From positions 648,847-712,846 of the forward strand of contig JAWQFM010000029.1 in the NCBI GenBank assembly GCA_033442325.1: 64,000 bases of DNA. Reading direction: 5' to 3'. The notes under the pieces are model-generated. The model had not been told where the DNA came from, did no database searches, and saw only the letters and a list, made by a program, of their open reading frames with translations. Source of the DNA: Salpingoeca rosetta. Taxonomy: Eukaryota; Protista; Choanoflagellata. The translations under genes and the position numbers were made by a program. Positions 32,548 to 36,460 of the stretch are shown here, piece after piece; the stretch's first letter is position 1; each line of letters begins with the position of its first letter.

Positions 32548-34635
32548 ATGTCTGACCACGGCAAGTTTGCCACGTCTGCGATCCACGCTGGGCAGGAGCC
32601 CGAGAAGTGGAAGTCGTGGGCCGTGTGCCCTCCCATCTCCCTGGCGACGACCTTCAAGCAGCCTGATCCGGGAGTGACCAAGTCTGGCTTCGAGTACTCG
32701 CGCGGCGGCAACCCCACCCGCAACTCGCTCGAGGAGGCCTTTGCCGCCATATGTCATGGCAAGAAGGGTACGTTCATCAGGGCTCATTGGAGGCAGCAAG
32801 GGTGCATGTGACAGTTTGAATCTTGCGCGTGTGTTCGTCCCCCCACCCCCAGCATCTATGTTGTTTGCGAGTGTGTGCGTGTTTTTTCCTGAAATTACAT
32901 ACAACACACATGCCTACTGCGCCATTCACGCTTTGTCTTGGATGCCATGAACATGCCAATTCAAACAGCTCTTGTGTGGGCCTCTGGTCTTGCCGGCACC
33001 AACGCGGTGCTCCAGCTCCTCCGCCCAAATGACCACGTCCTTGCCATTGATGACCTCTACGGCGGTGCGTTCAGCGTGACGCCGTGCACTTGATTCGCTG
33101 CAGCCGCTGCCAATTCTTCCTTTATGTATATGAAAGCTGACAGCCTTTCTCCTGCTTTCTTCACACTGTTCACCCCCATTCTCACGTTGCTGCCGCCAAA
33201 TGTCACACACACACGCACACACGCATGCACTCACTCTTTCAATCCTTACTCTCACAATCACTCAACCCAAACTGTCTCAATCTCTCACGCCCCCTTTCGT
33301 GGCTGCGTGTTTGCATGACTGTTTCGTGTAGGCACCAACCGGTTGTTGCGCCGTCTTGGCGAGCCCATGGGCATCCAGGCCGACTTTGTTCCCACCGCCA
33401 ACGTGGATAAGTTTGCCGACTCCATGAAGCCTAACACCAAGGTCCGGTATCCATTTGCGCCACAGCCAGCACTGCGTGCACACATGCCTGTGCGGCACCC
33501 TTTCTTGTGTTTGTCTATGCTGTTGTTCCGTGTTGTGCTGTCAGCAGTTCACTTCACGACCGCCACCAAATCGCACCAAGCCACACATGTATGTTCCTTT
33601 GCCTCGCGCATAAACTCACCTTTCGTGTCTGCCAACGTGATTCGTGTCTTTCCACATTTTTCCCAACCACCACAACCACCAACTGATACCACGTGTGCAG
33701 CTTGTGTGGATTGAGTCGCCAACCAACCCGCTGCTGCAGATCACGGACATCCGCGCGGTTGTGAAGCAGGTCAAGGCGAAGAACAAGGACTGCATCATCG
33801 TTGTCGACAACACGTTCATGTCGGCATACTTCCAGCGCCCGCTTGACCTCGGCGCTGACATTGAGTTTGCCTCTGTCACCAAGTACTACAACGGCCACTC
33901 TGACGTGCTCATGGGTGTGACCATCACCAACAACGCCGACCTGGCCGAGCGGCTGCAGTTTATCCAGTTTGCTGCGGGTGCCGTGCCGGGCCCCTTTGAC
34001 TGCTACCTGGTCAACCGTGGCCTCAAGACGCTGCACGTGCGCATGGCTGCACACGCCAAGAACGCCATCCGCGTTGCCCGCTACCTCGAGGCACACCCGA
34101 AGGTGGCGTGACCTGGACGTGGTGTGGGGAATGGACAGTGGAGGGGAAGAGGGGGGAGTGGGAAAGGGGGGAGGAGGGAAGAAGATCAAGGGTGGGGGAT
34201 AGAGGGCGAGCGGTGGTTGTGTGCACATGTGTTGTGTCATGTCGTGTCGTGGGCTGTCACGTGCAGTTGGGGTGGGGGAGGGGGAGTGGGGGTTCACGTG
34301 GTCACAAAGACGCATCTGTGCGCCCATTCTCACCGACAGCCACCACGGTGCCCACGCTGCCATGTATGTGTCGCGTGCACAGGTGCGGCAAGTGATCTAC
34401 CCTGGCCTTGAGTCGCACCCTGGGCACGAGATTGCCAAACGCCAGTGCCACGGCTTCAGCGGCATGGTCACCTTCCGCATCCGCGGTGACATTGAGGCCT
34501 CCCGCACCTTCCTCAAGTCCATCAAGGTGGGTGTCTCGTGCGTGTGTGTATGCCTGTGTGTGTATGCCTGTGTGTGTGTGTGTGCATACGTACGTGGTGC
34601 TACGGTTGCTCGCTTGCTTCGATTCTTCGTTACAA

Positions 34636-34666
<31 letters not shown>

Positions 34667-35003
34667 AACACCAACTCGCACTGACACGTTAACTCCCACC
34701 ACTGACACGTTAACTCCCACCGCCGCCGCCGCCGGCACCACCACCACCCTTCCGGTGTCCTTTTCACATGTATGCGCAGGTGTTCACGCTCGCGGAGAGC
34801 CTTGGCGCCGTGGAGTCGCTGGCTGAGCTGCCGTGCATCATGACGCACGCGTCTGTCCCCGCTGAGCAGCGTGCCCAGCTCGGCATCACGGACGACCTGA
34901 TTCGGCTCTCGGTCGGCATTGAGGACATTGAGGATCTCATCACCGACCTGCAGCAGGCCCTCAATGCTGCCGTGCGTACTGCCTTTCAGTCGCGGCGGTG
35001 GTG

Positions 35004-35071
<68 letters not shown>

Positions 35072-35374
35072 AAGAGAGGGAGACAGTGTGTGATTGTGAG
35101 TGAGTGCGTGTACATCCCTTTTCAGCCCCTCTTCCTCACCCCCACCATCACCCTTTAGGTCCCGGGCTACGAGGCGACGCCTGCTGTTGGCGAGTTCATC
35201 ACCGAGGACGCTGCCAAGACGAGCGCTGTGTCGAAGCAGCCCGCGACCACCGCCGCCCCGGGCAACGTACGCGCTTCTTGGGCAGGGGTGGGAGATGGAA
35301 TAGGTGGTGGCGGGAAGTGGGAAGCTTGTTGTGGAAGATGCAACCTGTGTATGCGTATGGGTATGTGTGGGCGG

Positions 35375-35405
<31 letters not shown>

Positions 35406-35635
35406 CGAACTATCGACAACGCTACCCCTCAGTGATTCACGTTACACATGTTGTATTGACATCCACACTGCCTCCTCGTGTGCCGTGTTCGACAGATGAC
35501 GCCACGCACGCCCAAGGTCAACTCTGTTTCCTCTGGTGTTGCCACGCCAACGCGCAGTGCTGCTGGCTACAACGCCCCAACCACCTCTCGGTAGGTCGTG
35601 ACTCAGGCAGGGGAGGGGAGGCTGTGGTATTTGCT

Positions 35636-35707
<72 letters not shown>

Positions 35708-35863
35708 CTTGCATGACCAATACCCGCACGACCAACGCTGCTCACTGAACTTCCCCCCCCCCCCTTCCTGCATAGCCTGGCTGAGTCACCTGCGCGCTAC
35801 GAGGGCTCCCGCCCCCCTTCGCGCCACCCGCCTGGCGGCCAGTCCACCATCACTTTTGGCTAA
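32548..35863 (+). CDS. CTH: Cystathionine gamma-lyase with a ~95-aa C-terminal extension
   Basis: Motifs FATSAIHAGQEP, PPISLATTFKQ, EYSRGGNPTR, DDLYGG, VWIESPTNP, VVDNTF, PLP-lysine SVTKYYNGHSD, YPGLESHP, LAESLGAVESL and LIRLSVGIED. Three extra in-phase exons follow: 35159-35266, 35496-35590 and 35776-35863. Confidence 0.95.
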
Positions 35864-36460
35864 GCAATGTAGCCCTTGCTGGCACGCGTGATGTGACCTG
35901 ACCTGACGACCCACACAAGGTGTTTTCTCTCTCTCTCCCACACCCATCCCTTTTGGTTTGATTCGCCCTGTTCCTCTCTCTCTCTCTCTCGCTGTTGTGG
36001 CGATCATGTGGAGACACAACACAAGCTGATACGATACACCACGCTTGTCACGTCACCCTTTGCCATACGCCCACCCACAATGAAGCTCGCAAGCAAAGCA
36101 ACACGGCAAGTGTATCAAGATGTCGTGCGTGGATGGATGGTGGAGAGTCAAGCAAACACAAACAAGTCGGGTGTGCGAATGTTGTTGCTTATCATGCGTC
36201 AATTTTCTACACTCGCTGTCACGTGGGCAAAAGCAGCAGCACGAGGTGACTGAACCAGCACGCTGTGCACCTTGACTTGCTCCCATCGCTTGCACCATCG
36301 CTTGCACCATGGCTTGCACCTTGATTCACCTGCTTTGTATCTTCTTCTTCGCCCGCGCACAACACACGCACACACACTCTCTCTTCCTCTGGCAACTAAC
36401 CCCGCTTTGTCAATCACCTTCGTGTGGTCTTGCTGTCCCCAGAACAGCAAACCACTCACC

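What the first reader, a model, noticed from the sequence alone, without database searches (positions are those of the whole stretch)
34972..35863. Cystathionine gamma-lyase carries a spliced tail ending in a Jupiter/SPIRAL1-like PPGG motif
Seen: no stop follows the enzyme core at the usual place. Three phase-consistent exons add VPGYEATPAV...PGN / MTPRTPKVNSVSSGVATPTRSAAGYNAPTTS / RLAESPARYEGSRPPSRHPPGGQSTITFG*, which the ORF track does not show. Established: PPGGxS(S/T)xxxG motifs typify the microtubule-associated Jupiter/HN1 and SPIRAL1 proteins. The tail also has S/T-P-x-K/R-like phosphosites. Inference: a cysteine/H2S-producing enzyme tethered to microtubules or the flagellum under phospho-control.
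Basis: partly seen in the sequence, partly recalled or inferred. Interest (0 to 1): 0.7.

Follow-up and report, generated by a model that had tools for sequence, protein, structure and literature searches.

The report
Cysteine enzyme with Jupiter-like microtubule tail
In this choanoflagellate, and in at least eight relatives, the cysteine/H2S-making enzyme cystathionine gamma-lyase carries a floppy extra tail of about 96 residues that ends in the same short peptide that makes animal Jupiter/JPT proteins stick to microtubules, so the enzyme may be anchored to the cytoskeleton, though this has not been tested.

Summary
The only cystathionine gamma-lyase (CTH) gene of this 55-Mb choanoflagellate genome has no stop after its core. 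Three GT-AG, phase-consistent exons (35159-35266, 35496-35590, 35776-35863) add 96 residues ending RHPPGGQSTITFG-stop.

The tail is not an artefact. Tailed CTHs occur in Barroeca, Hartaetosiga, Choanoeca and Salpingoeca helianthica, and on three unnamed intron-free contigs. In Monosiga brevicollis genomic DNA, core end, tail and stop lie in one uninterrupted frame. That frame matches the window's first splice junction residue for residue.

Across species the tail is variable (27% identity), but its last 14 residues are conserved (53%).

The end fits the JPT family motif PPGGxxSxxF. It matches 7 of 13 residues of the JPT2 C-terminal peptide that was shown to suffice for microtubule localisation.

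The same genome also holds a standalone Jupiter-like gene and a proline iminopeptidase locus that end the same way. The scan had flagged that second locus before, on other DNA of this genome.

Microtubule binding and phospho-control remain untested. I found no paper describing this fusion.

The parts
32548..32767 (+). CTH exon 1 (start ATG; ends with 1 base of a split codon)
   Evidence: PF01053 profile positions 1-69. The junction gives ...GKK-A-LVWASGL, as in orthologues.
32969..33064 (+). CTH exon 2
   Evidence: It aligns to orthologues.
33332..33441 (+). CTH exon 3
33701..34102 (+). CTH exon 4, 134 codons, with the PLP-lysine stretch SVTKYYNGHSD
   Evidence: PF01053 positions 140-271, E 5e-55. 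It is 85% identical to Barroeca monosierra CTH and is the only such locus in the genome.
34383..34526 (+). CTH exon 5
34780..34971 (+). CTH exon 6, the end of the enzyme core (...DLQQALNAA), with no stop codon
   Evidence: PF01053 positions 320-381 of 381.
35159..35266 (+). Tail exon 7, 36 codons. Its first 13 codons (35159-35197, VPGYEATPAVGEF) are a conserved start-of-tail element.
   Evidence: It aligns directly after the core end to the contiguous M. brevicollis frame ...ALDAA-VPTREATPSVADF and to C. perplexa, S. helianthica and H. gracilis.
35496..35590 (+). Tail exon 8, 31 codons plus 2 bases. It is Ser/Thr/Pro-rich and variable, and holds a TPTR site (Thr at 35544-35546).
   Evidence: It is needed to keep the frame into exon 9. 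The share of 31-mers held by RNA-like runs fits its presence.
35776..35863 (+). Tail exon 9, with an SPAR site (Ser at 35786-35788) and stop TAA at 35861-35863
   Evidence: alignment A4.
35819..35860 (+). Conserved C-terminal motif SRHPPGGQSTITFG (PPGG begins at 35828)
   Evidence: The last 14 residues average 53% identity among 7 orthologues, against 27% for the rest of the tail. The end matches 7 of 13 residues of the JPT2 peptide quoted in PMC12773733. hhalign of the tail profile aligns C-end to C-end with a small PPGG-repeat protein, E 4e-5.

Best explanation
The window encodes the single cystathionine gamma-lyase of a choanoflagellate as a 484-residue protein. It consists of a normal PLP-dependent core of 388 residues, then a low-complexity linker that is probably disordered, then a conserved 14-residue end, SRHPPGGQSTITFG. 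This architecture is old: it is found across craspedid choanoflagellates. The end piece is a Jupiter/JPT-type PPGGxx[S/T]xxF peptide placed at the very C-terminus, as in JPT2, where that peptide alone localises to microtubules. The most likely mechanism is that the tail tethers the enzyme to tubulin or microtubules. CTH is a homotetramer (established knowledge). Each enzyme would therefore display four such peptides on roughly 80-residue flexible arms, which could make up for having one motif per chain where JPT2 has several. Shown here: the exon structure, conservation of the tail and of its end, and the match to the published motif. Inferred: disorder, tetramer avidity, tubulin binding, and any regulation through the S/T-P sites. 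My odds: tail real and part of CTH 0.93; end motif related or equivalent to the JPT motif 0.7; it binds microtubules 0.4.
For: There is no stop after the core, and three phase-consistent GT-AG exons follow. Thirteen RNA-like runs from four studies hold 0.37-0.38 of the sampled 31-mers of 34700-35950. The value expected if exons 6-9 plus the 3' UTR are present and the introns absent is 0.369, against 0.30-0.32 if exon 7 or 8 were missing. Tailed CTHs occur in Barroeca monosierra, Hartaetosiga gracilis, Choanoeca perplexa and Salpingoeca helianthica; the latter three are complete ORFs on assembled transcripts. They also occur on three unnamed contigs; the two whose contigs I looked up have no introns. 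In Monosiga brevicollis one uninterrupted genomic frame runs from the core end through the tail to ...RAPPGGASSFTFG-stop, and the window's exon 6/7 junction reproduces that sequence without gap. Another species has a phase-0 intron at exactly the same core/tail boundary. The end is conserved and the linker is not. The JPT family motif and the sufficiency of the JPT2 C-terminal 13 residues for microtubule localisation are published, with Ser186 and Ser188 needed; the window has Thr at both positions. The same genome has a standalone gene whose best Pfam match is JUPITER and which ends PPGGHTHNIFG-stop. Only one CTH locus exists in the genome, so there is no tail-less copy.
Against: The likeness to JPT is a short motif only. 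Pfam JUPITER gives no hit to the tail. The tail profile retrieves PPGG-repeat proteins only at database E-values of 1-10. There is one motif copy, not four. The Lys of PPGGK, which the JPT2 paper links to binding, is Gln here and varies among species (Y, F, E, Q, A, K). Position 188 is Ile or Val in four orthologues. JPT2 is reported inside the microtubule lumen, an awkward place for a tetrameric enzyme of about 200 kDa. Nothing here tests binding.
Confidence: 0.45

Rival explanations
1. The tail is real and conserved, but its C-terminal PPGG peptide serves another purpose than microtubule binding. Candidates are docking to a different partner, condensate formation, another localisation signal or turnover control. 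The likeness to JPT would then reflect a shared short motif with a different or broader role.
For: Only about 13 residues resemble JPT. The Lys stressed for JPT2 binding is absent. JPT2 itself has other reported activities, namely NAADP binding and phase separation. A proline iminopeptidase locus in the same genome appears to end in the same kind of peptide. That suggests a general tag on enzymes whose target is unknown.
Against: The one experimentally defined activity of this exact kind of C-terminal peptide is microtubule localisation. The two hydroxyl positions needed there are kept as Thr in the window.
Confidence: 0.4
2. Exons 7-9, or 8-9 since exon 8 opens with ATG, belong to a separate small Jupiter-like gene lying downstream. 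On this reading the fusion is an artefact of reading the genome.
For: Exon 8 begins with ATG. I obtained no junction reads for the window.
Against: The CTH core has no stop without these exons. Exon 7 has no Met and continues the orthologous sequence exactly where exon 6 ends. Orthologues carry core and tail in one ORF on transcripts and in one genomic exon in M. brevicollis. The genome's standalone Jupiter-like gene lies elsewhere, on contig 34.
Confidence: 0.03
3. The tail is translated but is neutral, drifting low-complexity sequence without function, and the PPGG end is a chance match.
For: Most of the tail is variable low-complexity sequence. PPGG-like strings do arise by chance in this GC-rich genome: reversed-pattern controls give 1-9 hits.
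Against: The last 14 residues are conserved in all nine further CTHs whose ends were read (seven full-length proteins, M. brevicollis genomic DNA and fragment P0366), while the linker is not. The motif always lies exactly at the C-terminus. A second conserved element marks the start of the tail.
Confidence: 0.05

Closest known systems
[quoted passage not shown]
   Same: The PPGG-x-S-[S/T]-I-[S/T]-F peptide lies at the extreme C-terminus, with seven residues after PPGG and then the stop. It matches 7 of 13 residues, with hydroxyl residues at both positions needed for microtubule localisation. It sits in a basic, disordered-looking context.
   Different: JPT2 is a small standalone protein with four PPGG motifs and a MASNIF motif. 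Here a single motif ends a 388-residue enzyme, Lys184 is Gln, and there is no MASNIF in the window. The Monosiga and Choanoeca orthologues have SSIF[D/G] at the aligned place.
Drosophila Jupiter / JPT1 (HN1), Pfam PF17054
   Same: The motif type is the same. The genome's own standalone 144-residue gene (G000 contig 34) has JUPITER as its best Pfam match and ends in PPGG plus seven residues plus stop, like the CTH tail.
   Different: PF17054 does not match the CTH tail at E up to 10. Even the standalone gene is below Pfam's cut-off (14 bits against 27).
SPIRAL1 (plant plus-end tracking protein)
   Same: It is a small disordered microtubule protein with Gly-rich terminal motifs followed by Ser and hydrophobic residues.
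   Different: Its motifs are GGG (N-terminal, essential) and PGGG (C-terminal, dispensable for tracking), not PPGG. It is plant-specific, and I found no sequence match.
Animal cystathionine gamma-lyase (CTH/CGL)
   Same: The core is 50-60% identical to named animal CTHs, with the full PF01053 profile and the PLP-lysine stretch.
   Different: The animal enzymes listed are about 390-410 residues and, where read, stop a few residues after the ...AL.AA core end (Branchiostoma, Ladona). None seen carries a PPGG tail.
DUF4057 (PF13266) and unnamed small PPGG-repeat proteins (P0368, P0369)
   Same: They carry repeated [PA]PGG-x-SS-x-x-F-G motifs, the last one at the C-terminus. The tail profile aligns end to end with P0368. 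The C. perplexa tail weakly hits the C-end of DUF4057 (E 0.03).
   Different: They are standalone repeat proteins of unknown function. Similarity is limited to the motif, and database-wide E-values are 1-10.

Membership tests
Cys/Met metabolism PLP-dependent enzymes (PF01053), cystathionine gamma-lyase | Match to the whole Pfam profile above its cut-off | tested here: met
   Exons 1, 4 and 6 match profile positions 1-69, 140-271 and 320-381 of 381 with 45, 187 and 89 bits, against a cut-off of 27. Exons 2, 3 and 5 align to orthologues.
Cys/Met metabolism PLP-dependent enzymes (PF01053), cystathionine gamma-lyase | PLP-binding lysine in the conserved S-x-T-K-Y-x-x-G-H-S-D stretch | tested here: met
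   SVTKYYNGHSD is present in exon 4 and invariant in the choanoflagellate alignment. That this Lys binds PLP is established knowledge, not tested here.
Cys/Met metabolism PLP-dependent enzymes (PF01053), cystathionine gamma-lyase | Closest named relatives are cystathionine gamma-lyases rather than CGS, CBL or MGL | tested here: met
   The named hits of both profile searches are almost all cystathionine gamma-lyase of animals. Enzyme activity was not tested.
JPT / Jupiter / HN1 family | PPGGxxSxxF motif (PMC12803092) | tested here: met
   The window has PPGGQSTITF, with Thr in place of the Ser. One copy only.
JPT / Jupiter / HN1 family | Several (four) repeated PPGG motifs | tested here: not met
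   The window's tail has a single PPGG. Orthologues also have one canonical copy.
JPT / Jupiter / HN1 family | MASNIF motif | tested here: not met
   The window has SPARYEG at the aligned place. M. brevicollis and C. perplexa have ESSIFD and QSSIFG there, and one unnamed orthologue has NPILGD.
JPT / Jupiter / HN1 family | Match to Pfam PF17054 JUPITER | tested here: not met
   No hit at E up to 10 for the window's tail exons or for seven orthologous tails. The six-frame genome search was also blank, but its controls were silent too.
JPT / Jupiter / HN1 family | Small, basic, intrinsically disordered standalone protein | tested here: not met
   It is fused to a 388-residue enzyme. The tail itself is 63% Ala/Pro/Ser/Thr/Gly with K+R 8 against D+E 6, which fits disorder, but disorder was not predicted or measured.
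JPT / Jupiter / HN1 family | Binds microtubules | not testable with these tools
   The one complex prediction gave no verdict and is evidence neither way.
SPIRAL1 | N-terminal GGG motif and C-terminal PGGG motif (bioRxiv 10.1101/521047) | tested here: not met
   The tail has PPGGQ, with no GGG or PGGG.

The most novel reading that the evidence does not exclude
Choanoflagellates use the Jupiter-type C-terminal PPGG peptide as a portable address tag that places metabolic enzymes on or in microtubules, perhaps the flagellar axoneme. CTH would be one such enzyme in all craspedids, and proline iminopeptidase apparently another in this genome. Cysteine/H2S production would then be spatially organised by the cytoskeleton. 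The animal Jupiter/JPT family and these enzyme tails would share one pre-metazoan origin.
Probability: 0.15. Interest if true: 0.85.

Novelty: new variant of a known kind. Interest (0 to 1): 0.62.

Why it matters
CTH is the main source of cysteine by transsulfuration and a source of H2S. It is treated as a soluble cytosolic enzyme. A lineage-wide fusion to the peptide that localises JPT2 to microtubules would be an unreported way of placing sulfur metabolism in the cell. It would also show that the PPGG microtubule peptide existed, and was reused as a module, before animals arose. The idea is directly testable in Salpingoeca rosetta, where transfection and genome editing exist (my knowledge). 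It also corrects the public Monosiga brevicollis gene model. A full-text search for cystathionine, choanoflagellate and microtubule found no paper on this.

Tried and rejected
There is therefore no read-level junction evidence.

2. Complex prediction with this genome's alpha- and beta-tubulin plus a 44-residue orthologous tail scored 0.01 and gave no verdict. It is evidence neither for nor against binding.

3. Pfam JUPITER against the tails and against the genome gave no hit.

4. The ESM Atlas feature search with an orthologous tail gave only scores of 0.77-0.81, uninformative.

5. The representative search with exon 4 returned no near-identical protein. Records of the window's own genome seem to be left out of these collections (note).

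6. I first concluded from strict patterns that the CTH tail was the only such motif in the genome. That was wrong.

7. P0365 looked like a standalone tail protein. Its contig in fact holds the CTH core end, a retained intron and the tail.

8. Other loose pattern hits are non-coding frames, the antisense of a multi-copy gene family, or unrelated.

9. The spliced protein was never assembled or searched as a joined sequence. All searches used single exons or alignment rows given by reference.

Full report
**What is in the sequence**

The region 32548-35863 (+) is an intron-rich eukaryotic gene. Six exons encode a complete cystathionine gamma-lyase core: 32548-32767, 32969-33064, 33332-33441, 33701-34102, 34383-34526 and 34780-34971. 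Exons 1, 4 and 6 match Pfam PF01053 at profile positions 1-69, 140-271 and 320-381 of 381. The others align to orthologues. Exon 4 carries the PLP-lysine stretch.

Exon 6 ends ...DLQQALNAA in phase 0 without a stop. Read-through gives 44 junk codons from a GT microsatellite. Three further exons follow:
- Exon 7, 35159-35266, 36 codons.
- Exon 8, 35496-35590, 31 codons plus 2 bases.
- Exon 9, 35776-35863, 1 base plus 28 codons plus TAA.

All have GT donors and AG acceptors and keep the frame. Skipping exon 8 would break the frame. By my count the product has 388 core and 96 tail residues.

**Is the tail expressed and joined to the enzyme?**

Indirect evidence comes from 31-mer sharing. Thirteen runs of four studies, guessed to be RNA, each hold 0.37-0.38 of the sampled 31-mers of 34700-35950. 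Genomic-looking runs hold 0.70-0.74. If exons 6, 7, 8 and 9 plus the 3' UTR are present and all introns absent, the expected share is 0.369. Without exon 7 or exon 8 it would be 0.30-0.32, and with exon 6 alone 0.13. This fits all four exons being in mature RNA but does not prove the junctions.

**Comparative evidence, which settles the architecture**

Searches used one exon, or alignments whose rows were single exons and database proteins given by reference.

A profile search and a second one built from its hits found CTHs of 479-547 residues with tails:

| Protein | Source | End of the tail |
|---|---|---|
| P0153 | Barroeca monosierra, 85% identical to the window in exon 4 | ...RRAPPGGYSSLTLG |
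| P0154 | Hartaetosiga gracilis | ...ARQPPGGFTTFTLG |
| P0174 | Choanoeca perplexa | ...RRTAPGGESSLIFG |
| P0272 | Salpingoeca helianthica | ...GKNPPGGKGNFVFG |
| P0271, P0273, P0275 | unnamed contigs | same kind of end |

Sequences are, and names. The three transcriptome entries are annotated as complete ORFs. P0271 and P0273 lie on intron-free contigs of 1510 and 2104 bases.

The published Monosiga brevicollis model (MONBRDRAFT_12618, P0167) lacks the tail only because it is mis-spliced. In the genomic record, one uninterrupted frame runs from IMTHASVP... through ...DLEQALDAA-VPTREATPSVADF... to ...RAPPGGASSFTFG-stop. The window's exon 6 end and exon 7 start align to that continuous sequence with no residue missing or added. 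This validates junction 34971/35159.

A contig from another species retains a phase-0 GT..AG intron at exactly the same boundary. The genome holds only one CTH-like locus, so there is no tail-less paralogue.

**Pattern of conservation**

Among seven orthologues, mean pairwise identity is 68% in the core, 27% in the tail without its end, and 53% in the last 14 residues. P-G-G and the final Gly are invariant, and a basic residue precedes the motif.

A second conserved island opens the tail: VPG....P...[DE]F.

About 20 residues before the end there is a small hydrophobic-aromatic-acidic element. It reads ARYE in the window, SSIFGDE or SSIFDK in Choanoeca and Monosiga, and ARFE in the S. helianthica group.

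The middle is Ala/Pro/Ser/Thr-rich. The window's tail is 63% A/P/S/T/G. A variable linker with a fixed end is what one expects of a short functional peptide on a flexible arm.

**What the end piece resembles**

PMC12773733 makes three relevant points:
- The JPT2 C-terminal 13 residues LNPPGGKSSISFY localise to microtubules.
- Ser186 and Ser188 are needed for this.
- The peptide is predicted to sit in the taxane pocket of beta-tubulin.

The window ends RHPPGGQSTITFG. That is 7 of 13 identical residues, the same distance from PPGG to the stop, and Thr at both critical Ser positions.

Against this stand several points:
- Lys184 is Gln here and is not conserved among choanoflagellates.
- There is one motif, not four.
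- The window has no MASNIF.
- Pfam JUPITER does not match the tail.
- A profile of the tails retrieves small PPGG-repeat proteins only at database-wide E-values of 1 and 10. One of them belongs to Pfam DUF4057. Pairwise, the profile aligns C-end to C-end with P0368 at E 4e-5.

I therefore do not file the tail as a member of the JPT family. It carries a JPT-type C-terminal motif and may work like one. SPIRAL1 has GGG and PGGG motifs and is a looser analogy.

**Context in the same genome**

Strict patterns first suggested that the motif was unique to CTH. PGG plus five residues plus F-G-stop then occurs at three coding-looking places, against one reversed-pattern control hit:
- The CTH tail.
- An exon-like frame about 750 bases downstream of the last matched exon of a proline iminopeptidase on contig 10, ending ...KRPLQPPGGYSHNIFG-stop.
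- A 144-residue standalone ORF on contig 34. It has SSRVLAPPGGRSNFSF near its N-terminus and ends SSRVLAPPGGHTHNIFG-stop. Its best Pfam match is JUPITER, below the cut-off at E 0.03.

So the organism has a probable Jupiter homologue of its own, and the same kind of C-terminal peptide appears on at least one, perhaps two, enzymes. This favours a portable functional tag over a chance string.

**Mechanism proposed**

CTH is a homotetramer (established knowledge). With this tail it would present four PPGG peptides on flexible arms. I think the most likely role is tethering to tubulin or microtubules (about 0.4). A different partner for the same peptide is about equally likely.

The reported luminal site of JPT2 is hard to reconcile with a tetramer of about 200 kDa. 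If binding occurs, its mode may therefore differ.

Two full [ST]-P-x-[KR] sites (TPTR, SPAR) and two minimal TP sites exist. SPSR occurs in two orthologues. Regulation by phosphorylation remains a guess.

A complex prediction with the genome's own intron-less alpha- and beta-tubulin and an orthologous tail gave no verdict. It counts neither way.

**Novelty**

A full-text search for cystathionine, choanoflagellate and microtubule found nothing relevant. The enzyme is ordinary. The conserved fusion to a Jupiter-type peptide is, as far as I can tell, undescribed, and the public M. brevicollis model hides it. I class it as a new variant of a known kind, with moderate to high interest that depends on an untested function.

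Noticed in passing
L036:4458-4931 (Monosiga brevicollis CH991583.1): The public gene model MONBRDRAFT_12618 (P0167, 405 aa) leaves the true frame after ...LIRLSV and ends in junk. The genomic frame continues uninterrupted through the core end and a tail of about 110 residues to PPGGASSFTFG-stop.
   Followed up: yes
L045:1099-1533 (G000 contig 34, about 484775-485209, +): A standalone 144-residue ORF has PPGG motifs near both ends and a Gln-rich middle. Its best Pfam match is JUPITER (E 0.03, below the cut-off).
   Followed up: partly
G000 contig 10, 1228723-1231509 and 1232194-1232295 (L038, L044): At a proline iminopeptidase locus, an exon-like frame about 750 bases downstream of the last matched exon ends KRPLQPPGGYSHNIFG-stop. 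Splicing was not checked.
   Followed up: partly
P0153 (Barroeca monosierra model), residues about 78-106: The model has a 29-residue insertion exactly where the window has intron 1, so it probably includes a retained intron. Its tail also lacks the VPG...EF start element, so an exon may be missing.
   Followed up: no
P0272, P0273, P0275, P0363-P0365 tails: The CTH tails of the S. helianthica group carry one or two copies of a well-conserved 21-residue repeat, NPYARGRVP[AG]GTMPHPxxRFE, of unknown meaning. It is absent from the window's tail.
   Followed up: no
L001 and 12 other loci of G000: A multi-copy family of large ORFs (857 aa in L001) contains LLVVQDPPGGLSSATY. Its antisense strand produced most of the first pattern hits. 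It is unrelated to Jupiter.
   Followed up: partly
L025/L026:1495-2832 and L027:1495-2850 (G000 contigs 13, 11, 7): Beta- and alpha-tubulin genes are intron-less single ORFs in an otherwise intron-rich genome.
   Followed up: no
window 34972-35158, 35267-35495, 35591-35775: The tail introns hold long GT or CA microsatellites: (GT)n at about 35004-35070 and 35380-35405, and (CA)n at about 35637-35706. These are like the polarised introns noted for the neighbouring gene (s1-433596).
   Followed up: no
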